Virus record (IMG/VR): IMGVR_UViG_3300050821_013430
Span: 408,750-472,749 of that record
Reading direction: 5' to 3' (one strand)
DNA: 64,000 nt
Shown: piece after piece, positions 2,961 through 20,490 of the stretch
Layout of the letters: every line of letters starts with the position of its first letter
Position numbering within the stretch: position 1 is the stretch's first letter
The notes under the pieces: model-generated
Seen by the model: only the letters and a program-made list of their open reading frames with translations
What the model was told of the DNA's origin: nothing
Databases searched by the model: none
Position numbers and translations under genes: made by a program

Positions 2961-3199
2961 TGTTTCACCTCCACCAACCGATACAACTTCTTGGTATCCG
3001 TGTCGTAGAGCAGCACCTCTCCGCCCACATCCTCTGCATCCGCATACACCACATTGGGGCCATGTAGGTATTGGGCTAAGTAGGCGGAATCATACTTCCA
3101 GGCAGAGGAAAGCGGGCCCCATTGAAGATCGCTATTCAGAAACTGATTCAGATGTTTGGGATGCCGAATCACCAGAGCCAGATCGTCGATGTATCTCAT
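2957..3199 (-). CDS. hypothetical protein containing a 32-bp repeat
   Basis: Overlapping stop/start coupling with both neighbours. Confidence 0.6.
   Translation of the reverse strand: MRYIDDLALVIRHPKHLNQFLNSDLQWGPLSSAWKYDSAYLAQYLHGPNVVYADAEDVGGEVLLYDTDTKKLYRLVEVKQ
3062..3093 (+). repeat. 32-bp exact direct repeat, copy 1 (copy 2 at 14821-14852)
   Basis: atgtaggtattgggctaagtaggcggaatcat at both sites. Confidence 0.95.
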
Positions 3200-4522: not shown

Positions 4523-4786
4523 CTACTTCCCCTTACTCTCGAAGACGATAGGGGCCGGGATGCAATACTGAATCGCCCCATCGCACACCCACCCGTCCTT
4601 ACAAACGGAATCATTGGCGCAGGCGGTAGGAGGAGGCTCCGCCATCGCTTCCACCAGAACCTGAGAAATGGCCAGGTCATGCCGAAGGCGCAGGTCATCC
4701 AACACCACCAGCCCCAAACTCAGAGAGCCGAGGAAGGAGGCGAGGATCACCCACTTGTACTCATACATACGCTGATAGAGGTTCAT
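4523..4786 (-). CDS. membrane-anchored Cys-rich protein
   Basis: GGAGAGG SD; N-terminal TM; CANDSVCKDGWVC. Confidence 0.55.
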   Translation of the reverse strand: MNLYQRMYEYKWVILASFLGSLSLGLVVLDDLRLRHDLAISQVLVEAMAEPPPTACANDSVCKDGWVCDGAIQYCIPAPIVFESKGK

Positions 4787-4787
4787 G

Positions 4788-5075
4788 TCAGACCTCTCCC
4801 AAGATGTCGAAGATGTTGGCCGTAGGAACCACCGGAGCGGCGGGGGTGGGATGCTTGGCGTTGAGAGACTCCCAGCGGTTGAACTGCCCACGCACGATGA
4901 CATTGCCGTTCTGATGCTTCAAAGTCTGCGCATTCCCCATCTCGGAGAACTTGGGCGGGGAAGCGGCACGATCCTGCGACACCGTGCCACGATTGTTGGA
5001 TCGATTGTGGCGACGGAATCCCGACTTGCTCGCCTTGTTTTCCGACTTGTCCGCACTCTTGTTCTGCTTGGCCAT
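4788..5075 (-). CDS. basic low-complexity protein
   Basis: GGGAG SD before ATG 5075. Confidence 0.6.
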   Translation of the reverse strand: MAKQNKSADKSENKASKSGFRRHNRSNNRGTVSQDRAASPPKFSEMGNAQTLKHQNGNVIVRGQFNRWESLNAKHPTPAAPVVPTANIFDILGEV

Positions 5076-5204
5076 GGTAGTATCTCCCTATGCGTTGATT
5101 GGTTGAATTACCTGCGATTGACTGCGAACGATTTCGCTCGGAATCAAACGCAGAGAATTAGAACCCAGGACGGAGCGGATATAGGTGTAGGTAAGGAGTT
5201 CAAC

Positions 5205-5885
5205 ATGAAGAGTATCGAACGAGAAAAGGCACGGGTTATGCGACAAGAAGGACAGAGTGTTAGGGACATTGCTAAGGCGTTAGGGGTCGCCAGAAGTAGT
5301 GTCTCTGTATGGGTGAGGGATGTTGTACTTACTCAGGCGCAGATAGATGCGCTAACGACGCGCAATCCTATCTACGATAGGCAGCACAAGGGCGCGAAAG
5401 GAAGACAGCGATTAGCCAGGGAAGCACGCATTGAAGCCAGAAAAAACGGACACGAGGTAGCAAAACGAAAGGAATATCTGCACGCATTGGGATGTGGTCT
5501 GTACTGGGGCGAAGGAGCAAAGGATAGGGTAAGCTGTCAATTAGCCAACAGCGACCCATACTTACTGAAAGTATGGCTTCAATTCCTACATCAGTATTTC
5601 CCTGATGTGAAAACGACCCTGATCATCCATTGCTACACTGGCAACGGTCTATCAGTTGAGGAGATAGAGAATTACTGGTCTGACACCCTCGGTATTCCTA
5701 AGGGCGATTTCAGGAAGACAAGAGTGAATCCAATAAGTAGAGCGAGCCTACACAAGAAGCCACAGAACACGCTTCTCTACGGTACAGCACATATCACTGC
5801 TAAGAAAGGGATGCGAATAGTTCAACACATCTTCGGGGCCATTGAGGAATATGGTGGCTTCTCTACTGAGTTTGGGTTGGACTAA
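5205..5885 (+). CDS. HTH + LAGLIDADG-like putative homing endonuclease
   Basis: AAGGAG SD then ATG 5205; HTH (SVRDIAKALGVARSSVSVWV); GLYWGEG and NSDP...YWS motifs; opposite strand to neighbours. Confidence 0.7.
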   Translation: MKSIEREKARVMRQEGQSVRDIAKALGVARSSVSVWVRDVVLTQAQIDALTTRNPIYDRQHKGAKGRQRLAREARIEARKNGHEVAKRKEYLHALGCGLYWGEGAKDRVSCQLANSDPYLLKVWLQFLHQYFPDVKTTLIIHCYTGNGLSVEEIENYWSDTLGIPKGDFRKTRVNPISRASLHKKPQNTLLYGTAHITAKKGMRIVQHIFGAIEEYGGFSTEFGLD

Positions 5886-5891
5886 CTACAC

Positions 5892-5969
5892 TGGCGTCCC
5901 CATCCGGGCTCGAACCGGAACCAACAGATTGAAAGTCTGTCCGCCTAACCAGTTAGCAGATATGGGGAC
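5892..5969 (-). tRNA. tRNA-Glu (TTC) with encoded CCA
   Basis: Acceptor GTCCCCA/TGGGGAC+GCCA; anticodon arm ACAGA-CTTTCAA-TCTGT; T-loop GGTTCGAGCC. Confidence 0.93.
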
Positions 5970-5979
5970 ATACACTACT

Positions 5980-6360
5980 CTACTGCGGCACCAACTTCTT
6001 GATCATGTACTTGACCAAATCCCGATCAAAAGGCCACTCCTGTGTGGGAATCTTGGCAGCAGTCAGCCATGACCGAATGATGGCCGCGCCTTTCCCACCC
6101 CAACTATGGCTCACTGCTTGTGCGGGATAGTAGGATGGATCGAGTTCATTCACGATGAACTTCGCCACATCCTCCCCACTCCCATCTACGCCCAGGTCGT
6201 GATCCAACATCAGCAGACCGATCCGAACCGTCCCGGCTTGCAGAATCTCCTTCCCCTCATCGCAGGAGAAGGCATGCAAGACCACATGCCCCGCCGCGGT
6301 AAAGAGGTCTTCCGCCATGTCGTGCCGTGTCTGGTCATCATCCACGATCAGGATGTTCAT
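5980..6360 (-). CDS. cyclic-phosphate-processing receiver (cREC)-like domain protein
   Basis: ILIVDDD..R, LDHDLG and HSW..G motifs; start ATG 6360. Confidence 0.75.
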   Translation of the reverse strand: MNILIVDDDQTRHDMAEDLFTAAGHVVLHAFSCDEGKEILQAGTVRIGLLMLDHDLGVDGSGEDVAKFIVNELDPSYYPAQAVSHSWGGKGAAIIRSWLTAAKIPTQEWPFDRDLVKYMIKKLVPQ

Positions 6361-6361
6361 C

Positions 6362-6556
6362 TCACACCTCCTTCCCTTCCGGTTCCAGAAAGAACGCGTT
6401 GATGCGGCTCTCCTCCGTTTCCCCATCCCAGACCACATAGACCAACATGCCCCAAGTACGCTTACACACGCCCACCTTGACGTGCCACTCAGACTTGTTC
6501 TGAGCGGCGGAATGTCCCTGCACCCGATCTCCTGCCTTGACTGCGAAGAACGCCAT
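6362..6556 (-). CDS. small SH3/KOW-like protein
   Basis: KAGDRV...VYVVWDG pattern. Confidence 0.55.
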   Translation of the reverse strand: MAFFAVKAGDRVQGHSAAQNKSEWHVKVGVCKRTWGMLVYVVWDGETEESRINAFFLEPEGKEV

Positions 6557-12953: not shown

Positions 12954-13229
12954 CCCACCTCCTCCTCTTCCTCCTCACACTCGTCTTTGTCCTCTGCCAT
13001 CATGCCCGACATATAGGCGACCGTGCGCCTGTCCTCGCACTCCGCCCACACTTCCGCCATTTCCCGACGTTGATCCCTGGGAGCCTTCATTGTCATACCT
13101 CCTCACAACCTGCCATACCATATGATAGGCTGTGAGGAACTATCCCACATGCTGCCCCAAACGCAGAAAACACGAATCCCCAGAAAGGAGCCTTGTGGCC
13201 CCTTTCCAGGGTGAATGTAGGTGGATGCC

Positions 13230-13430
13230 CTACTTGACTCGTTCCGCCTCACCTTGTGGGATGTCCTGCACCCCGAAGCGCTGCTGTAGGGTCATTGTCC
13301 CCATAGCGCCCAGGTTGTAGTCAAAGGTGACCACGGTGTGGGTTCCTTCCCGCTTGACTACGGTAACCTCCCACACTTGGCCATACTTGACCGAAAGGTG
13401 GGCGCGGATGGTAGGCGAGATGTCGTTCAT
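13230..13430 (-). CDS. hypothetical protein
   Basis: Start at MNDISPT. Confidence 0.5.
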   Translation of the reverse strand: MNDISPTIRAHLSVKYGQVWEVTVVKREGTHTVVTFDYNLGAMGTMTLQQRFGVQDIPQGEAERVK

Positions 13431-13620
13431 TGTCCTACCTACCACGCCACCGCGACCAGACAAGCCACCACGTAGGCCAGTGCCGCACCATAGGCGATGA
13501 TGTTGTTCATTGTGTGTCTTCTCCCTTCGTGTCGGTTGGGAAACTACAACGGCCCCAAACCTCCCGTGTATGGGAAGTTAGGGGCCGGAGGGTAGTTCTC
13601 CTACCTTGTAGGCTGGGAAC

Positions 13621-14136
13621 CTACTTCGCCGCGGGGGGAGTCACCTTGACGCAAAGCGTCTTGGATGCGTCCGCAAGGCGCGTCACGACGAAACCGAGTT
13701 CCTTACAGCGGATCGCGACTTGCTCGATCGCCATTCCGCTCTCGAATGCCTCGGAAAGCGCCGAACACGGCACGTTGTACGACCCGGGGAAACCGCCGAG
13801 CGAGGCACGCAAGCCAGCGGAAAGCCCGTTGTACTCGGCGCGGCGCGTCTCGTACTCTTCCGCATACGGCCCCATGAGATTCGCCAGATCCGCGCGAATC
13901 TGTTTCTCGGCCTCGCGCTTCCGCTCGGTCGCCATGAACGAAAGCGACTTGATCACGCGATCGTTGACGGTACGGATCGTGTCGGGAGTCAGCACCTTGT
14001 CGCCGAGAGCCTTGCCGTTGGGCCAGGCATTGGCGAAGATTGCGTGCAAGGTCGACAGTGCCTCGGTCGCCGCGCTCTCTTCCGTCTCGGAAAGGACCAG
14101 AACCTTGTTACTCGTGTCGCTGGGAATCATGGCCAT
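13621..14136 (-). CDS. first gene of the leftward early array, unknown function
   Basis: AGGAG SD before ATG 14136; very GC-rich codons. Confidence 0.75.
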   Translation of the reverse strand: MAMIPSDTSNKVLVLSETEESAATEALSTLHAIFANAWPNGKALGDKVLTPDTIRTVNDRVIKSLSFMATERKREAEKQIRADLANLMGPYAEEYETRRAEYNGLSAGLRASLGGFPGSYNVPCSALSEAFESGMAIEQVAIRCKELGFVVTRLADASKTLCVKVTPPAAK

Positions 14137-14149
14137 GATGACGTATCTC

Positions 14150-14707
14150 CTGTTATGTCCCATGTGGGACGGTTGGGTTACTACTGAACGCTACTGCTAC
14201 GTAGCGGTTAGAACCTAAGGCGCCGCGAAGCACCGCGCAACGTGGCATACTACTTGCCTTAGATGCTAACCGCTACGGGAAACGATGTAGGGGGAACCTA
14301 TACAGTGTGGCTCGACTCCTTACATCGTTTCCGTATCCTGGTAGGATGCTATCTCTACCTGATAGTCCAGTGTCGTTTTCTCCCTATGTTTTCGGGGGGT
14401 TAGGAAGGACGGGACACGTAACGAGTATCCGACCTAACACTAGACAGGATGACCTGGCCCTACTCTAGCCTACCTTGTGGCAGACCACGCACCCACTATG
14501 TGGGACATCTTCCGCCTCCGCTTTCATCGCCCCACCTTGCACCCCTTACGGGGTATGCATGTAAGACGCTAGGACGTTTGGCGCCGATGTAGGACTATTA
14601 GGTTGTCAGGGAGCAGAGGTCATCCAACATCCTACCTTGTCCCACGTTGCGACCACGGATGTAGCGCGCGGTGCGGGAGGGTAGGTTGCGGGAGAGGACC
14701 ACGATAC
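14150..14707 (-). ncRNA. large (~560 nt) structured leader / ncRNA
   Basis: 12-bp stems 14200-14211/14266-14277 and 14278-14289/14321-14332; long-range stem 14447-14455/14617-14625; GUAA tetraloop hairpin 14541-14554. Confidence 0.6.
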
Positions 14708-14717
14708 AGACATAGAT

Positions 14718-14734
14718 AGCACGTGCTATGCCAA
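14718..14734 (-). promoter_or_regulatory. sigma54-type promoter (predicted TSS ~14707)
   Basis: TTGGCATAGCACGTGCT = GG-N10-GC; overlaps palindrome ATAGCACGTGCTAT; directly upstream of the structured leader. Confidence 0.55.
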
Positions 14735-14820
14735 GAGAGGGTAGAGGCTAACTATGCGGAATCATTGGAGAGGCACCTGATGTAGGGCAAGGTGGGATGG
14801 GGGCGGGAGCCCAGGGTACG

Positions 14821-14852
14821 ATGTAGGTATTGGGCTAAGTAGGCGGAATCAT
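14821..14852 (+). repeat. 32-bp exact direct repeat, copy 2
   Basis: Identical to 3062-3093; partial variant ggctaactatgcggaatcatt at 14746-14766. Confidence 0.95.
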
Positions 14853-14929
14853 TGGGGATAGGGTTGGGGTATGGGGCCCCCAGGGTGGGGGAGCCTACCC
14901 TCACCCCCAGGGTAGGGGTCTTGCCTACC

Positions 14930-15300
14930 TGGTACAGTTGTTGTATGGGATAGAAGCATGCCAAGCCTAGAGGGTAGGGGGAGGTAGGACAGGGCGGGGA
15001 TGGCCGGTATCTTGCACCGGATAAACTCATGCCAAGGGTGCCGTGTAGTACAAGGTGGGAGATGTAGGGCAAGGTCGGGCGGTGCAAAACCCATGCCAAG
15101 TGGTAGGATAAGGTGGTTTGGGGCCGGTTGGCATTGAAACTGCAAGGGAAAGGAACATGCCAAGGGCTTTTGGTAGGAAGTTGTAGGAGATGGTAGGTTT
15201 CTCGAGGAATGGCATAGGTATTGCAGGGGAAAGAAGGATACCAGCAGAAAGGTGGGATATTGTAGTTGGTATGGGGATTGCAAGGACAAGAAGCATGCCA
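14930..15300. repeat. array of five 34-bp dyad elements made of inverted sigma54-like boxes
   Basis: Units at 14930, 15001, 15129, 15210 and 15267, each TGG-N10-G(C/T)-N4-NN-N10-CCA; half unit ending 15098. Confidence 0.8.
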
Positions 15301-15691
15301 TAGGGGGCTGGAGCCCCCGTTTCCTGGGAGGTAGGCCAGGGTGGGGCGGTGTGGGCCTCCCAAACAGGGGTAAAACACTCTTCCGCCCGCCTTCAACACT
15401 AATCCCTCCCATTCAATCAAACCCTGCTCGACACTAATCTGACTATCCTATCCGCCCCACCAATCCTACCATTCCTAAACACCCCTCAATCTATTCCACC
15501 TTACCTTACTGCCCGAAACTACTCCTCCTATAAGGCCCTAGGAAGCGTCGCACCTTAGAACGTAGGGGGATGTCAATCTCAGTCGAAAGCGTCCTATAAC
15601 TAAGCCTAGCCCCACTAATAGGCCATCTACCCACCACCGCCACTTCAAATCAGACCCCCTCAACCCTCAAAACCTGGATAATTCGCCGAAC

Positions 15692-15733
15692 TGCAAAATT
15701 GACGCCGGAAACCGAATGCAAGAATCGTGCCAA
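15692..15733 (-). promoter_or_regulatory. tandem sigma54-type boxes
   Basis: TTGGCACGATTCTTGCA (15717-15733, consensus match) and CGGCGTCAATTTTGCA (15692-15707). Confidence 0.65.
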
Positions 15734-15751
15734 AATGTAAGCGTCAAATGA

Positions 15752-16000
15752 ATGGAATTAGATACTTCAACTCTTGGAGGTGCCATTCTTTGCGGTAAGG
15801 ACAGCCCGACATCGGTATTGGCTGCTGCCGCGGGACTCCTGAACAAGAGGAAGACGACAGATGGGACAGCCTTTGGATTGAAAATCGTGCCAGGAGATCA
15901 TGAGCGAGAGGATCCGCGTAAAATGGAGAGTGGGGCGAGAGCCCTAAACCTTATTAGGAGGAATAAGACGCTCGGAAAGGATCGTAATATCATCATCTGA
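15752..16000 (+). CDS. hypothetical protein
   Basis: ORF only. Confidence 0.4.
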   Translation: MELDTSTLGGAILCGKDSPTSVLAAAAGLLNKRKTTDGTAFGLKIVPGDHEREDPRKMESGARALNLIRRNKTLGKDRNIII

Positions 16001-16174
16001 AAACTCCTCATCACCCACAAACCAACTATATTCTCTCTCACGACCAACATAAACACCGTTCTCCCACCTATTACCTTCAATATAGGTATAAGAAGCGATG
16101 CGGGGCTCATATTTCTTATCCTTATCTTGAATCCAATAGTATCCTAATTCTCTAAGTGGCGTCTTGCTTCCCAT
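15944..16174 (-). CDS. hypothetical protein
   Basis: AAGGA SD before MGSKTPLRELGYYWIQ. Confidence 0.5.
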   Translation of the reverse strand: MGSKTPLRELGYYWIQDKDKKYEPRIASYTYIEGNRWENGVYVGREREYSWFVGDEEFSDDDITILSERLIPPNKV

Positions 16175-16249
16175 ATGGTGTCCTTTGTTATTGACATGGT
16201 AAATCCAAGAGAATAAGAAGTCAAGAGGATAAAATGACATTGGGAAGAG

Positions 16250-17155
16250 ATGCTGAAAACTGGAATCATTACCGCCCCACCCGCTATGGTGAGAGACATC
16301 AGCGACTTCGTGGTAGGAGCTTATGCTACACGGATCCTGGAAAACTTTGAGGAGAAGAGATTCCCACGGAACAAAGAAAGTATGGCGATACGAACCGTGC
16401 TGGAAGCGTTGGCCGAACGAAGCGGCAAGAAAATGATCATCCACCAGATAGACTTCGCCTACTACTTTGCGAAATTGAATTTTGATGATTGGGATGGGCC
16501 GGTGGGACCTGGGGAGAAGATAAAAGAAGTGCTAGGAGAGCACGGAGTAGTAGGAGTAAAGTGCTATGAAGTCTTCTACCCTACAATGGACAAACATCCA
16601 CGACCGGGAGCTAATGCTCAATGGAGCTATAACTTCCAAATCACCACCTATGCAGAATTGCCAATGGCTCAGAATCTGCAAGACTTTCGTCAATTGACCT
16701 TGGATTTGCAAGGGAAACAGAATGAGCTGAAGGTAACGGTGGCCCATGAACTCATTCATATGGTCCAGTATATCATTCAGATAATGCGAGGATTGAAAGA
16801 GATAGGAGGACTACCTGCTGAGAAAGTCAGGCATTCGGCCCCTCCCTTGGTTGATCCGAGCATCCCTTATCACTTACGGGATGAAGAGTTTTACACCAGT
16901 TTGGCGGATACCATTGAAACCTTTATGGAGCATGTTCGGAATGTGCCGGTGGAATACCGGGAAATAGCACTGCGGAGCTTTTTGAACCTACCATTCGCGG
17001 CGAGCAGAGATGCTCGGAAGAATTTGGTTGTTAGCACTTTCTTCGAGAAGATGCATAAGGATGATCCGAAAAGATGGGCGGAGTATGCCAAGAAGTTTGT
17101 GAAGCATTTGAGTCAGCATCCGGAAATCATGGGAATGGAAAGCGCTGCGGAATAA
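16250..17155 (+). CDS. HExxH metallopeptidase-like protein
   Basis: TVAHELIHMVQ with downstream EEF. Confidence 0.65.
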   Translation: MLKTGIITAPPAMVRDISDFVVGAYATRILENFEEKRFPRNKESMAIRTVLEALAERSGKKMIIHQIDFAYYFAKLNFDDWDGPVGPGEKIKEVLGEHGVVGVKCYEVFYPTMDKHPRPGANAQWSYNFQITTYAELPMAQNLQDFRQLTLDLQGKQNELKVTVAHELIHMVQYIIQIMRGLKEIGGLPAEKVRHSAPPLVDPSIPYHLRDEEFYTSLADTIETFMEHVRNVPVEYREIALRSFLNLPFAASRDARKNLVVSTFFEKMHKDDPKRWAEYAKKFVKHLSQHPEIMGMESAAE

Positions 17156-17238: not shown

Positions 17239-17961
17239 ATGAATTTGTTGAAGGCTCTGTTGATTGCTTGTTTGTCGATTTTCAGTTTCGGTTGTGGTAC
17301 CAGTATGCACGTCAGTGGGCAAGTTAGTGTGCCAAACTTGATGAGTAAGACGGTAGTACTAACTACTTATGTGATGAATGAAGATGATGGTACCGCCTCA
17401 GTAAAACCATATTGCAGCGGAGTCTTTATTTCGGAACGGGAGATTTTGACAGCAAGACATTGCGCGGCAGCGATAGCAGAAAAGGATAACGTGGAAGAGT
17501 TGGATAAGCTTCCAATGCACTACACCTTAGCCTCCGAAGCGGTAGGCGTTGGCAAGGAGCCTGCTGCGATGCATTTGGCCTTCGTGGTCAAAGAAGATAA
17601 GGACAAAGATTTGGCACTACTGCTATTGCCGAAACAAGGGATTCCGGCTCATGGAATTGCGCGAATCGCGGACGAGATGCCCGCACTGGGCGAAGCGGTG
17701 GAAGTTATTGGAACGCCCACGGGAAATTATTTTACTTTGAGCCACGGCTATGTTGCGGCAGTCAGAGAAGACTATCATGATCGAAAAGGTACCTTTTTGC
17801 AAGTGAGTGGTAATGGCATCTACTTCGGCAACAGTGGCGGACCTGCTTACAATGAAAAAGGTGAGCTGGTCGGGATTGCAGACTTTTTGAGTATGAGATT
17901 GCCCGGCAGCGTTTTCTTTGTGGCAGTACCGGAACTGAAAGAGTTTATCGAAGAAGTCTAA
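17239..17961 (+). CDS. trypsin-like serine protease, putative lipoprotein
   Basis: LTARHC, DLALL and GNSGGP triad motifs; lipobox SFGC. Confidence 0.9.
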   Translation: MNLLKALLIACLSIFSFGCGTSMHVSGQVSVPNLMSKTVVLTTYVMNEDDGTASVKPYCSGVFISEREILTARHCAAAIAEKDNVEELDKLPMHYTLASEAVGVGKEPAAMHLAFVVKEDKDKDLALLLLPKQGIPAHGIARIADEMPALGEAVEVIGTPTGNYFTLSHGYVAAVREDYHDRKGTFLQVSGNGIYFGNSGGPAYNEKGELVGIADFLSMRLPGSVFFVAVPELKEFIEEV

Positions 17962-19245: not shown

Positions 19246-20490
19246 AAGAAAGTTATTCTGCTGCTAGCATTGTTACGACAGAAATTTGATATCCATTTGA
19301 TATATCGAATTATTGCCCTTGATCTAGGCATGATCCATCATTCTCATATATGCAGCGAACAGTTTCCGTCCCAGTCAATGTCCCAACAGGCTTTCTTGAT
19401 TACTTGAAGACCTGCTCGGTCATCTTCAATAGGCATATCGATTGGGCCTTCGAGAACTATACCTACAACAAGATCAAGGCCCACCAAGCCCTCTACTACC
19501 CTATTCGGGCAGAGTTCCCAGAGATACCTTCCTCGGTCTTGCAGGCTATCCGAGATACTGCTGTGGAGGCTGTAAAAGCCATCGACTTCAAGTTCAAGCC
19601 CACCAAGAAGCCCCATTCAGCAGTTAGATACAATGCTCGAACCATATCTCTTCGTGGCAATTTGCTCTCGTTCTCTTGGTCGGGCGATAGGATCAAGCAG
19701 TTAATCAAACTGCCTACTTTCTTCACCAATCGCTATAAGGACTGGAAGTTCCAATCAGCCACCATCGGCTATGACAAGCGGAAAGCCCAAGTCAGAGCCA
19801 ACCTTACTTTTACTTACCCCACTCCTCCTATCGTTCAGACTGACAACTCTGATCGAATAGTTGGGGCAGATCGAGGCTTGCACAACATCATCTCGCTGTC
19901 GGATGGTACTCTGTTCAATGCCTCTCGTGTTCGAGCCCAGAAACGCAAGTTCCTGTATGTAAAACGACAGCTCCAAGCAAAAGGCACTCGATCATCAAAG
20001 CGTCTCCTCAAAAAGAGATCAGGTCGAGAAATGCGGTTCAGCTCGGATGTCAATCATTGTCTATCCAAGAAGTTGGTCAATCTTCCGTATGATGTGTTCG
20101 TCCTCGAAAACCTTGCGGGTATCCGTAAACGAAACAAGGGTCGAAAACTCAACGGCTGGCTGTCTAACTGGACATTCTTTCAGTTAGAGCAGTTCATCGG
20201 GTACAAGACAGAAGCACTTGGCAAGCAAGTAGTCAAGGTGGATGCCCGCTATACCAGTCAGAAATGCTCAGACTGTGGGAATACAGACAAAGCAAGTAGG
20301 AAGGGCTCTCGATACTTATGCGTTGAATGTGGGCATGCGGAGCATGCCGATATCAACGCCGCTAAGAATATCAAGGCCAACTACACTCTCTCCTTGGCTG
20401 CAAAGAACAAGGAGCAGGCTCTCGTCAATGAGCCAAATGCCTCGGTCGCAAGATCAGAGGCAAGTTATTAGTTTTCTGATAACGCTTGAC
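19246..20490 (+). mobile_element. IS200/IS605-family (IS1341-like, tnpB only) element; left end approximate
   Basis: tnpB followed by hairpin GTTATTAG-TTTT-CTGATAAC and TTGAC at 20490; no tnpA in window. Confidence 0.6.
19350..20471 (+). CDS. tnpB: RNA-guided endonuclease TnpB
   Basis: RuvC-I GADRG, RuvC-II VLENL, Zn finger CSDC/CVEC, RuvC-III HADINAAKNI. Confidence 0.95.
   Translation: MQRTVSVPVNVPTGFLDYLKTCSVIFNRHIDWAFENYTYNKIKAHQALYYPIRAEFPEIPSSVLQAIRDTAVEAVKAIDFKFKPTKKPHSAVRYNARTISLRGNLLSFSWSGDRIKQLIKLPTFFTNRYKDWKFQSATIGYDKRKAQVRANLTFTYPTPPIVQTDNSDRIVGADRGLHNIISLSDGTLFNASRVRAQKRKFLYVKRQLQAKGTRSSKRLLKKRSGREMRFSSDVNHCLSKKLVNLPYDVFVLENLAGIRKRNKGRKLNGWLSNWTFFQLEQFIGYKTEALGKQVVKVDARYTSQKCSDCGNTDKASRKGSRYLCVECGHAEHADINAAKNIKANYTLSLAAKNKEQALVNEPNASVARSEASY

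What the first reader, a model, noticed from the sequence alone, without database searches (positions are those of the whole stretch)
14150..14734. ~560-nt structured RNA starting just below a sigma54-type promoter and leading the early array
Seen: no credible ORF; adjacent perfect 12-bp stems (14200-14277, 14278-14332), a 9-bp long-range stem (14447/14625) enclosing several hairpins, a GUAA tetraloop, and several mismatches that are G-U on the minus strand (some favour the plus strand). The box at 14718-14734 predicts a start near 14707. GTCCCA/TGGGAC segments near 14157, 14165, 14501 and 14639 allow alternative pairings next to the RBS of the first gene. I did not see RNase P, tmRNA, SRP or hammerhead hallmarks. 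Inference: an unclassified large ncRNA, or a cis-acting leader (antiterminator or translational switch). A plus-strand box at 14243 could yield an antisense RNA.
Basis: partly seen in the sequence, partly recalled or inferred. Interest (0 to 1): 0.75.

Follow-up and report, generated by a model that had tools for sequence, protein, structure and literature searches.

The report
Conserved structured leader RNA of huge phage
The largest gene-free gap of a 472-kb soil phage genome most likely encodes a ~570-nt, highly folded leader RNA that starts at a sigma-54-type promoter and precedes the first gene of the long leftward gene array; relatives keep this arrangement, it matches no Rfam family, and its function is untested.

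Summary
Window 14137-14751 is the largest ORF-free gap of a 472,749-bp soil-metagenome phage. The minus strand folds far better than dinucleotide shuffles (z = -6.6) and better than the plus strand (z = -4.4). Nothing matches Rfam.

New evidence comes from distant relatives of the first gene (about 21-28% protein identity in the family alignment).
- Wherever the contig reaches far enough upstream, 0.9-2.3 kb of gene-free DNA lies upstream of that gene.
- Sigma-54-type boxes are confined to that DNA: 14 inside against 0 outside.
- Short collinear sequence blocks are shared with the window.
- In 9 of 9 leader segments the sense strand folds better than the antisense strand.
- The 78-nt hairpin at 14277-14200 keeps its 12-bp outer stem in four loci. 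Six of the 12 pairs changed on both sides, and the G-U pairs fit only the sense strand.
- Two soil metatranscriptomes hold pieces of the leader and of the gene start.

Best reading: a cis-acting structured 5' leader of the leftward operon, probably processed or stabilised at its long hairpins and controlling the first gene. Antitermination, a trans-acting RNA and an origin primer are not excluded. The plus-strand antisense box is not conserved.

The parts
14746..14771 (-). Conserved element upstream of the promoter (AATGAT-N8-GTTAGC on the sense strand). A second copy lies at 14833-14858.
   Evidence: Direct repeat D6. The same element precedes the sigma-54-type box in L028, L029 and L011, and partly in L004 (alignment).
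14718..14733 (-). Sigma-54-type -24/-12 box, TGGCAT-N5-GTGCT. The predicted transcript start is near 14707.
   Evidence: 10 of 11, correct GG-N10-GC spacing. Homologous last sense-strand boxes in L004, L011, L028 and L029 give the consensus TTGGCAY-N5-STGCATTAC. Boxes are restricted to the upstream noncoding DNA of relatives, 14 against 0, p = 1.5e-7. The RNA contig reaches 14675 and nothing lies at 14761-15942.
14627..14689 (-). Leader domain 1: a hairpin domain closed by CCUACC/GGUAGG and UCCCGC/GUGGGA. It contains the conserved GGUAGGAUG.
   Evidence: Pair probabilities 0.85-1.0. GGUAGGAUG is conserved in L028 and L029 just 5' of block B.
14447..14625 (-). Leader domain 2: a multibranch domain closed by the 9-bp stem 14625-14617/14455-14447. 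It holds conserved block B (14618-14594), the GNRA-capped hairpin (14568-14528, loop 14549-14546) and block A (14482-14460).
   Evidence: Stem P about 0.9. Block B is shared with L004, L028 and L029; block A with L004 and L029, and partly with L011. The closing stem itself is not confirmed in relatives. The strain change 14563 turns a U-G pair into C-G in the 8-bp helix.
14334..14445 (-). Leader domain 3 (10-bp closing stem 14445-14436/14374-14365) and hairpin 14364-14334.
   Evidence: Centroid structure and pair probabilities 0.8-0.99. There is no comparative test.
14278..14332 (-). Hairpin HP2: a 12-bp perfect stem, an inner GAGCC/GGUUC stem, and a loop ending in UAUA.
   Evidence: It resembles the AUAUA-loop hairpin of the relatives, but their covariance model R2 does not match it.
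14200..14277 (-). Hairpin HP1: a 12-bp outer stem plus a 9-bp second tier, about 22 bp of near-continuous helix. This is the conserved, covarying element.
   Evidence: Alignment A5 with L004, L028 and L029: 97.9% of cells paired, 6 of 12 pairs changed on both sides, covariation 0.708 against 0.326 in shuffles (0 of 500), and 29-42% paired when the register is slid. Model R1 finds a single copy in the genome.
14137..14199 (-). Linker, RBS-proximal hairpin GUCCC-ACAU-GGGAC (14170-14157), Shine-Dalgarno AGGAG (14151-14147) and the conserved AUCAUCAUG start context.
   Evidence: Block F is conserved with L028 (-39..+2), and the start context is conserved in five loci.
13621..14136 (-). First gene of the leftward array (171 aa, unknown function). 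It is the anchor that identified the homologous leaders.
   Evidence: The AlphaFold model has pLDDT 81 and no significant fold match.

Best explanation
Window 14137 to about 14707 (minus strand) is the 5' leader of the mRNA for the leftward gene array of a huge soil phage. The likely sequence of events is as follows. Steps 1-3 are supported by sequence, comparative and metatranscriptome evidence, although no transcript start has been mapped. Steps 4-5 are inferred.

1. Host RNA polymerase carrying a sigma-54-type factor starts transcription at the box 14733-14718.
2. The RNA folds into several domains and ends in two long adjacent hairpins (HP2, HP1).
3. A 60-nt linker then carries the ribosome-binding site of the first gene.
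4. The roughly 22-bp near-perfect helices of HP1 and HP2 serve as double-strand-specific processing and stability elements. RNase III-type cleavage would separate the upstream leader from the coding mRNA and leave a protective stem.
5. The conserved single-stranded blocks (GGUAGGAUG, block B, block A) bind a protein or form tertiary contacts that set translation or stability of the first gene.

The confidence of 0.5 is for the cis-acting leader reading as a whole. That the region is a transcribed, conserved, structured RNA I rate at about 0.75; the specific RNase III-type mechanism of steps 4-5 at about 0.3.
For: - Largest gene-free gap of the genome, with the RBS and start codon placed immediately after it.
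- Fold z = -6.6 on the minus strand against -4.4 on the plus strand.
- The sense strand folds better than the antisense strand in 9 of 9 leader segments from 7 loci.
- Relatives of the first gene, at only about 21-28% protein identity, keep 0.9-2.3 kb of gene-free DNA upstream. Four loci also keep the divergent trypsin-like peptidase.
- Sigma-54-type boxes: 14 in 9.5 kb of that DNA against 0 in 19.7 kb elsewhere in the same loci. In the window's own genome, 7 of 43 lie here.
- Collinear conserved blocks are shared with L004, L028 and L029.
- The HP1 outer stem shows covariation, and its G-U pairs would be A-C mismatches on the other strand.
- A second hairpin module covaries among the relatives.
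- In a 98% identical strain variant, the leader differences lie in positions with low pairing probability or turn U-G into C-G. Only 2 differences fall in 14233-15016.
- Metatranscriptome contigs cover 14348-14675 (depth 7.1) and 13912-14189. Nothing lies upstream of the box, and HP1 and HP2 are left uncovered.
- No U-tract follows HP1, so it is not an intrinsic terminator.
Against: - The function is wholly inferred. No cleavage, half-life or translation data exist.
- RNA evidence is thin: assembled contigs at depth 2-7, without strand information. DNA carry-over cannot be excluded, and the runs were found by searching for this stretch.
- Only HP1 is supported by covariation in the window, from 4 sequences of which two share the same outer stem. 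RNAalifold finds no consensus structure around block B, and the long-range closing stem is not reproduced in relatives.
- Part of the predicted pairing involves GGUAGG/CCUACC motifs, which also abound as DNA motifs on both sides of the promoter. These could be protein-binding sites.
- One relative, L008, has a box only 111 nt from its gene, so a long leader is not universal.
- The phage encodes no sigma-54, enhancer-binding protein or RNase III, so every factor would have to come from an unknown host.
- Further sense-strand boxes at 15098 and 15732 could start longer transcripts.
Confidence: 0.5

Rival explanations
1. Processive antitermination RNA. The nascent leader, or its adjacent hairpin pair, binds the elongating polymerase and makes it resistant to terminators, as the put RNAs of phage HK022 do. 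One start could then serve a co-directional array of hundreds of kilobases.
For: Nearly all genes from genome position 423 kb leftwards lie on the same strand. Two directly adjacent stem-loops lie in the leader. Long hairpins with weak U-tails occur inside the array at 13211-13178 and 11878-11841. The conserved sequence blocks suggest a specific binding partner.
Against: Terminator-like sites are no more frequent than in shuffled sequence (9 against 9.5). HP1 and HP2 lie 375-500 nt from the start, next to the gene, rather than just after the promoter. They are much longer than put stems. There is no similarity to any Rfam antitermination element. HP2 is not conserved as such.
Confidence: 0.15
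2. A stable, trans-acting large non-coding RNA, released from the leader by cleavage at HP1 or HP2. It would act early in infection as a scaffold, sponge or decoy for host proteins.
For: The RNA contig inside the leader has higher depth (7.1) than the contigs on the gene (2.2-3.2) and is separated from them by the uncovered hairpins. Leader blocks are better conserved than the adjacent protein. The leaders are large (0.6-1.1 kb), multi-domain and carry conserved loops such as AUAUA.
Against: The depths are too low to compare. There is no terminator or other defined 3' end. The RNA is always tied to the same downstream gene, which fits a cis role. The leader of L008 may be only about 80 nt long.
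Confidence: 0.15
3. A replication-origin region. The structured transcript, or the hairpins extruded in single-stranded DNA, primes or activates DNA replication, as ColE1 RNA II or the transcription-dependent origins of T4 and T7 do.
For: The global minimum of cumulative GC skew of the whole genome lies at window 14549, inside the leader. The 2.1-kb noncoding region holds dense repeats (GTAGG, GATGTAGG and tandem 34-nt units), and the stretch from about 15400 to 16250 has lower G+C than the phage DNA to its left. HP1 and HP2 fold almost equally well as DNA on either strand. The RNA is close in size to RNA II.
Against: The skew minimum coincides with the switch in gene orientation, which explains it without an origin. 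There are no DnaA boxes. The G-U pairs and the consistent advantage of the sense strand point to RNA, or at least to one strand. The leader is always fused to the RBS of a conserved gene.
Confidence: 0.12
4. No RNA function. The fold signal would be a by-product of DNA motifs for regulatory proteins present in both orientations, together with two fortuitous palindromes.
For: GTAGG/CCTAC-type motifs are 8-fold enriched and occur in both orientations around the promoter. Several high-probability helices pair GGUAGG with CCUACC.
Against: The HP1 stem contains none of these motifs yet covaries across four loci. The sense-strand bias is found in all relatives. The strain variant spares the paired positions. 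RNA contigs are present.
Confidence: 0.05

Closest known systems
Leader of the phage lambda PL-N transcript and the RNase III sites of the T7 early region (R0.3 before gene 0.3). Comparison from general knowledge.
   Same: A long untranslated leader lies between strong early promoters and the first early gene. Long, nearly perfect hairpins sit just upstream of that gene's ribosome-binding site, and further structured hairpins lie between the following small genes (window 13525-13674 and 13000-13224). There is an array of tandem promoters upstream.
   Different: The promoters here are of the sigma-54 type, not sigma-70. The leader is 2-5 times longer (0.57-1.1 kb) and has several domains. There is no sequence similarity. 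No boxA/boxB-like nut site was recognised, and cleavage is untested.
HK022 put RNAs (RNA-mediated processive antitermination). Comparison from general knowledge.
   Same: Two adjacent stem-loops in a nascent phage early transcript, in a genome that needs very long co-directional transcription.
   Different: The hairpins are 55 and 78 nt with 12-bp perfect stems, much larger than put. They lie next to the gene, not next to the promoter. Only one of them is conserved in relatives.
Large structured bacterial and phage ncRNAs of unknown function (GOLLD, ROOL, OLE, raiA) in Rfam
   Same: Size class (about 0.5-1 kb), multi-domain predicted fold, association with a phage, and no known function.
   Different: No match to any of the 4,227 Rfam models at gathering score or at E up to 10. 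The RNA here is fused to a downstream ORF rather than being a free-standing gene.
ColE1 RNA II (origin primer of about 550 nt)
   Same: Similar length, strong secondary structure, and a location at the genome's GC-skew minimum.
   Different: It runs into a translated gene. There is no evidence of an origin, and a conserved antisense partner is lacking.
Sigma-54-dependent promoters (for example nifH and glnAp2)
   Same: TGGCAY-N5-(C/G/T)TGCW with exact GG-N10-GC spacing, a CTGCA -12 element as in nifH, and a conserved sequence element upstream.
   Different: It sits in a lytic-type huge phage, in tandem arrays and in both orientations. No enhancer-binding protein or sigma-54 gene was found in the phage.

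Membership tests
Any Rfam 15 family (including GOLLD, ROOL, tmRNA, RNase P, SRP, riboswitches, HEARO/omega RNA) | Covariance-model score at or above the family's gathering threshold | tested here: not met
   Whole window at gathering score: only one tRNA, at 5897-5967. For 13900-16400 at E up to 10: two chance-level hits, both outside the leader.
Sigma-54-dependent promoter | -24 GG and -12 GC separated by 10 nt within TGGCAC-N5-TTGCW | tested here: met
   14733-14718 scores 10 of 11. Homologous boxes in L004, L011, L028 and L029 score 10-11 of 11.
Sigma-54-dependent promoter | Enhancer-binding AAA+ activator and its upstream binding sites | tested here: inconclusive
   A conserved upstream element exists (AATGAT-N8-GTTAGC). 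The only PF00158 hit in the phage is a ClpB-like chaperone, and there is no PF04552 hit. The host is unknown.
Sigma-54-dependent promoter | Transcription start about 12 nt downstream of the GC, dependent on sigma-54 | not testable with these tools
   The only data are strandless metatranscriptome contigs, which end at 14675.
RNase III processing site of phage early mRNA (T7 R sites, lambda N leader) | About two turns (20 bp or more) of near-continuous double-stranded RNA in an untranslated segment | tested here: met
   HP1 has 12 + 9 bp across a 1-nt mismatch. The homologues have 17-23 bp.
RNase III processing site of phage early mRNA (T7 R sites, lambda N leader) | Cleavage within the helix in vivo or in vitro | not testable with these tools
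   The only hint is that RNA contigs stop at 14189 and resume at 14348, leaving HP1 and HP2 uncovered at depth 2-7.
HK022 put-type antitermination RNA | Two short stem-loops immediately downstream of the early promoter that act on RNA polymerase | tested here: not met
   Two adjacent hairpins exist, but they lie 375-500 nt from the predicted start and are far larger. Only HP1 is conserved. Action on the polymerase is not testable.
Intrinsic terminator or attenuator | G+C-rich hairpin followed by a U-tract | tested here: not met
   No terminator-like site lies in 14137-14750, and no U-run follows HP1 or HP2.
Replication origin with DnaA boxes | Cluster of TTATCCACA-like boxes | tested here: not met
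   There is no box with at most 1 mismatch between 11805 and 21905. The GC-skew minimum at 14549 is also explained by the strand switch.
Protein-coding region | A conserved ORF with an RBS | tested here: not met
   Only ORFs of 31-53 aa lie in 14150-14734. No gene was called in the homologous 0.9-2.3 kb of the relatives, apart from one 82-aa call in L029. The conserved blocks are short and separated by variable lengths.

The most novel reading that the evidence does not exclude
The leader would represent a new class of large (0.5-1.1 kb), multi-domain functional RNA specific to a lineage of huge soil phages. It would be made first from sigma-54-type promoters and released by cleavage at its terminal hairpins. 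It would then act beyond its own gene, for instance by reprogramming the host polymerase for very long processive transcription or by sequestering host factors. Its conserved blocks (GGUAGGAUG, block B, block A, and the AUAUA-loop hairpin of the relatives) would be the functional sites.
Probability: 0.25. Interest if true: 0.8.

Novelty: new variant of a known kind. Interest (0 to 1): 0.6.

Why it matters
Huge phages are known almost only from metagenomes, and how they start and sustain transcription over hundreds of kilobases is largely unknown. This locus gives a concrete and conserved handle on that question:
- a divergent control region with arrays of sigma-54-type promoters, an unusual choice for a phage because such promoters need an ATP-driven activator;
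- a long structured RNA whose sequence blocks are kept better than the neighbouring protein.

If the RNA proves functional, it adds a new family to the few large structured RNAs known. It would also offer a testable model for early gene control, RNA processing or antitermination in huge phages. The covarying hairpin and the promoter consensus can serve at once as search tools for more members.

Tried and rejected
Searches for relatives that found nothing:
- Nucleotide search of 13000-16000 against 50,697 phage records.
- tblastn of the first gene and of the 301-aa neighbour against the same records.
- IMG/VR scans with five single proteins.
- The metagenome scan returned only a contig identical to the window (L002).
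- The exact-pattern scan for block A in IMG/VR gave 13 hits, all of them chance.

Relatives that could not be used:
- The closest relative of the first gene (58% identity, 986 nt of gene-free upstream DNA) and three others could not be read because their sample files are too large.
- P0004 has no close relatives.

Structure tests that gave nothing:
- RNAalifold on the block B region and on the gene-proximal 200 nt gave no useful consensus beyond the HP1 stem.
- The long-range closing stem of domain 2 could not be traced in relatives.
- Model R2, built from the AUAUA-loop hairpin of the relatives, does not match HP2 in the window, so no homology is claimed.
- RBS-to-upstream duplex predictions were inconsistent between loci.

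Other negatives:
- The fold of the first protein (pLDDT 81) has no significant match in the PDB or BFVD.
- No sigma-54, true enhancer-binding protein, RNase III, dsRNA-binding domain or RNA polymerase beta subunit was found in the phage.
- GGA (CsrA-type) motifs were counted by eye only, and their number looked close to chance.
- Two literature searches found no report of sigma-54-driven phage early operons with such a leader. Absence from that library is not proof.

Full report
CONTEXT. The window is the last 64 kb of a single 472,749-bp contig held as an IMG/VR virus record rated complete. Its two ends overlap by 353 bp. It comes from soil metagenomes. It carries phage-type genes: several pectate-lyase-like tail fibres, a collagen-repeat protein and PhoH. 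A greedy ORF map shows that almost all genes from genome position 423 kb leftwards lie on the minus strand. All six tRNAs lie there too. G+C rises from about 46% to 56% towards window 14 kb and drops to about 45% to the right of 16 kb. The finding lies exactly at this switch.

THE OBSERVATION. Window 14219-14751 is the largest gap in the ORF map of the whole genome. The first gene of the leftward array starts at ATG 14136, behind AGGAG at 14151-14147. The upstream ATG at 14163 is not the start, and both homologues found by the first protein search are 171 aa.

- The two adjacent 12-bp perfect stems: HP1 at 14277-14200 and HP2 at 14332-14278.
- The 9-bp long-range stem 14625-14617/14455-14447, with pair probability about 0.9.
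- A GUAA-capped hairpin that is a GNRA loop only on the minus strand.
- The GUCCCAC and GUGGGAC words.

The minus strand of 14140-14710 folds to -236.8 kcal/mol (z = -6.6). The plus strand gives z = -4.4. In 150-nt windows the hairpin pair dominates, with z about -9 on both strands. The 14425-14724 part is structured only on the minus strand, with z about -2.3. No Rfam family matches.

THE PROMOTER. The minus-strand box at 14733-14718 (TGGCAT-N5-GTGCT) has the sigma-54 GG-N10-GC geometry. Boxes scoring at least 10 of 11 number 43 in the 472-kb genome, and seven of them lie in window 14243-15732. On the minus strand they are at 14733, 15098 and 15732. On the plus strand they are at 14243, 15129, 15210 and 15267. 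Three of the plus-strand boxes belong to five tandem 34-nt units at 14930-15300 that point towards the rightward genes.

RELATIVES. The first gene has no relatives in phage databases or IMG/VR. A profile search of 1.8 billion representative proteins found a sparse family of about 170-aa proteins (34 hits). In the alignment of 25 family members, all except one closer relative (58%) share 19-28% identity with the window's protein.

Wherever the contig reaches far enough upstream, the homologous gene is the first of a co-directional array of small genes, and 0.9-2.3 kb without called genes lies upstream of it. Where the contig is shorter, every upstream base that is present is gene-free (501 nt for P0006).
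- L004: 1278 nt.
- L006: 1604 nt.
- L011 and L013: more than 2.1 kb.
- L012, L028 and L029: about 2.1-2.3 kb up to a divergent trypsin-like peptidase. The window has the same arrangement, with its peptidase at 17239-17961.
- The unread contigs of P0003, P0010 and P0013: 986, 950 and 1371 nt.

Sigma-54-type boxes occur 14 times in the 9.5 kb of these upstream regions and never in the remaining 19.7 kb of the same loci (p = 1.5e-7). The last sense-strand box lies 600 nt before the start codon in the window. It lies 950 nt before it in L004, 1147 in L011, 1096 in L028, 933 in L029 and 111 in L008. The consensus is TTGGCAY-N5-STGCATTAC, and an AATGAT-N8-GTTAGC element precedes it. The promoter type and the long leader are therefore family traits, although the leader length varies.

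RNA STRUCTURE, COMPARATIVE EVIDENCE.
1. In nine leader segments from seven independent loci, the sense strand always has the more negative z-score. Examples are -6.9 against -2.6 in L006 and -6.1 against -3.6 in L011.
2. The leaders share short collinear blocks although the adjacent proteins are barely alignable.
   - GGUAGGAUG plus block B (window 14618-14594) is shared with L004, L028 and L029.
   - Block A (14482-14460) is shared with L004 and L029.
   - The RBS-proximal block is shared with L028.
   - L004 and L029 share about 100 nt next to the gene.
3. HP1 is homologous in the window, L004, L028 and L029. In MAFFT alignment A5 the 12 outer pairs are formed in 47 of 48 cells. Six pairs changed on both sides, and one of them shows three different Watson-Crick pairs. 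The covariation score is 0.708 against 0.326 in column shuffles (0 of 500 as high). Sliding the register leaves 29-42% paired. The U-G and G-U pairs in L004, L028 and L029 would be mismatches on the other strand. Model R1 finds this hairpin once in the whole genome.
4. A second module, a three-tier hairpin with an AUAUA loop, covaries among L004, L028, L029 and L011 (7 of 13 pairs). Its model does not match the window, so HP2 is not claimed as its homologue.
5. A 98% identical strain variant (L001) has only two differences in 14233-15016, against 2-3% in the flanks. One of them turns a U-G pair of an 8-bp helix into C-G. The others lie in positions with low pairing probability.

The limits of this evidence are as follows. 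RNAalifold gives no consensus around block B. The long-range closing stem is not reproduced in relatives. Some predicted helices pair GGUAGG with CCUACC. These motifs are also enriched as DNA words on both sides of the promoter, in this genome and in the relatives.

TRANSCRIPTION. Two soil metatranscriptome runs from different studies hold identical pieces: 14348-14675 (depth 7.1) and 13967-14168 in one run, and 13912-14189 in the other. Nothing lies between 14761 and 15942, upstream of the box. A search with the leader alone again finds the first run. This fits a start near 14707. The contigs stop at 14189 and 14348, within 11-16 nt of the outer edges of HP1 and HP2. That would fit excision or cleavage there, but at this depth it is only a hint. 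The contigs have no strand, DNA carry-over cannot be excluded, and the runs were selected by searching for this stretch.

MECHANISM. Supported by the evidence: a conserved, structured, untranslated RNA segment lies between a sigma-54-type promoter and the first gene. Inferred: its role.

I favour a cis-acting leader whose roughly 22-bp helices are double-strand-specific processing and stability elements, as in the T7 early region and the lambda N leader. Its conserved unpaired blocks would bind a factor that tunes the first gene.
- In favour: HP1 and its homologues all have 17-23 bp of near-perfect helix. No U-tract follows them. Strongly structured hairpins also lie between the next genes.
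- Against: the phage has no RNase III of its own. A mere cleavage site also does not explain 0.5-1 kb of conserved blocks.

The rivals are processive antitermination (put-like), a released trans-acting RNA, and an origin primer. The origin idea rests on the genome-wide GC-skew minimum at window 14549. That minimum coincides with the strand switch, and no DnaA boxes are present. None of these can be excluded without experiments.

The sigma-54 reading also has an open point. No sigma-54 gene was found, the only PF00158 hit is a ClpB-like chaperone, and only a sigma-70-family ORF was found. The factors must therefore come from the unknown host.

COMPARISON AND NOVELTY. The locus works most like the leaders of classical phage early operons. 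It is not a member of any described RNA family: the Rfam test was not met, and the put and terminator features were not met either. It is a new, conserved variant of a known kind of element. It is notable for its size, its sigma-54-type promoters and its occurrence in huge soil phages. Two literature searches found no description of it.

Noticed in passing
window 14930-15300 (+ strand): Five tandem 34-nt units spaced 57-128 nt apart. Each has a sigma-54-type box (TGGCAT-N5-TTGCA) followed by GGGAAAGAAG-CATGCCAAG. The ends, TGGCAT and ATGCCA, form an inverted repeat. Read on the other strand, each unit gives TTGGCAY-N5-TTTCC, a motif that recurs in sense orientation in L006 and L008. It is unclear which strand is functional, or whether the unit is a dimer-binding site.
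   Followed up: partly
whole genome; minimum at window 14549: G+C rises steadily from about 46% at genome position 240 kb to about 56% at 420 kb, towards the start of the leftward array. It falls to about 45% to the right of window 16000. The global minimum of cumulative GC skew lies inside the leader.
   Followed up: partly
window 14821-14852 and 3062-3093: An exact 32-nt copy of part of the promoter-upstream region, including the second AATGAT...TTAGCC element, lies 11.7 kb away inside the leftward array.
   Followed up: no
genome 369,430-370,090 (outside the window): A second noncoding stretch with two 11-of-11 sigma-54-type boxes (genome 369,458 and 369,645, + strand) and many GTAGG/CCTAC motifs lies between minus-strand genes.
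   Followed up: no
L004 869-912, L028 2545-2588, L029 2545-2588, L011 1628-1671: A conserved three-tier hairpin with an invariant AUAUA pentaloop and covarying stems occurs in the leaders of relatives (7 of 13 pairs with double changes). It was not detected in the window.
   Followed up: yes
window 13525-13674 and 13000-13224 (- strand): The intergenic segments after the first and later small genes are strongly structured on the sense strand (z = -7.8 and about -6). A 15-bp hairpin with a weak U-tail lies at 13211-13178.
   Followed up: no
window 17239-17961 (+); L012, L028, L029: A trypsin-like serine peptidase gene is conserved as the divergent neighbour across the roughly 2-kb control region. 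In the window a 301-aa ORF without relatives (16250-17155) lies between them.
   Followed up: partly
window 19350-20471 (+): A TnpB / Cas12f-like ORF (OrfB_IS605 and TNB domains) lies about 5 kb to the right of the finding.
   Followed up: no
window 5980-6438 (-) and 4785-5885 (+): One ORF has a cyclic-phosphate-processing receiver (cREC) domain. A divergent 366-aa ORF has a helix-turn-helix. They lie next to the tRNA at 5897-5967.
   Followed up: no
genome 353,968-356,187 and about 2,442-2,579 (outside the window): The phage encodes a ClpB/ClpA-like two-ring AAA+ chaperone (739 aa) and one sigma-70-family protein (212-aa frame). No RNA polymerase beta subunit was detected.
   Followed up: partly
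contig ends (genome 1-353 and 472,397-472,749): The first and last 353 bp are 99% identical. This suggests a circular assembly or terminal redundancy, although the record is classed as linear.
   Followed up: no
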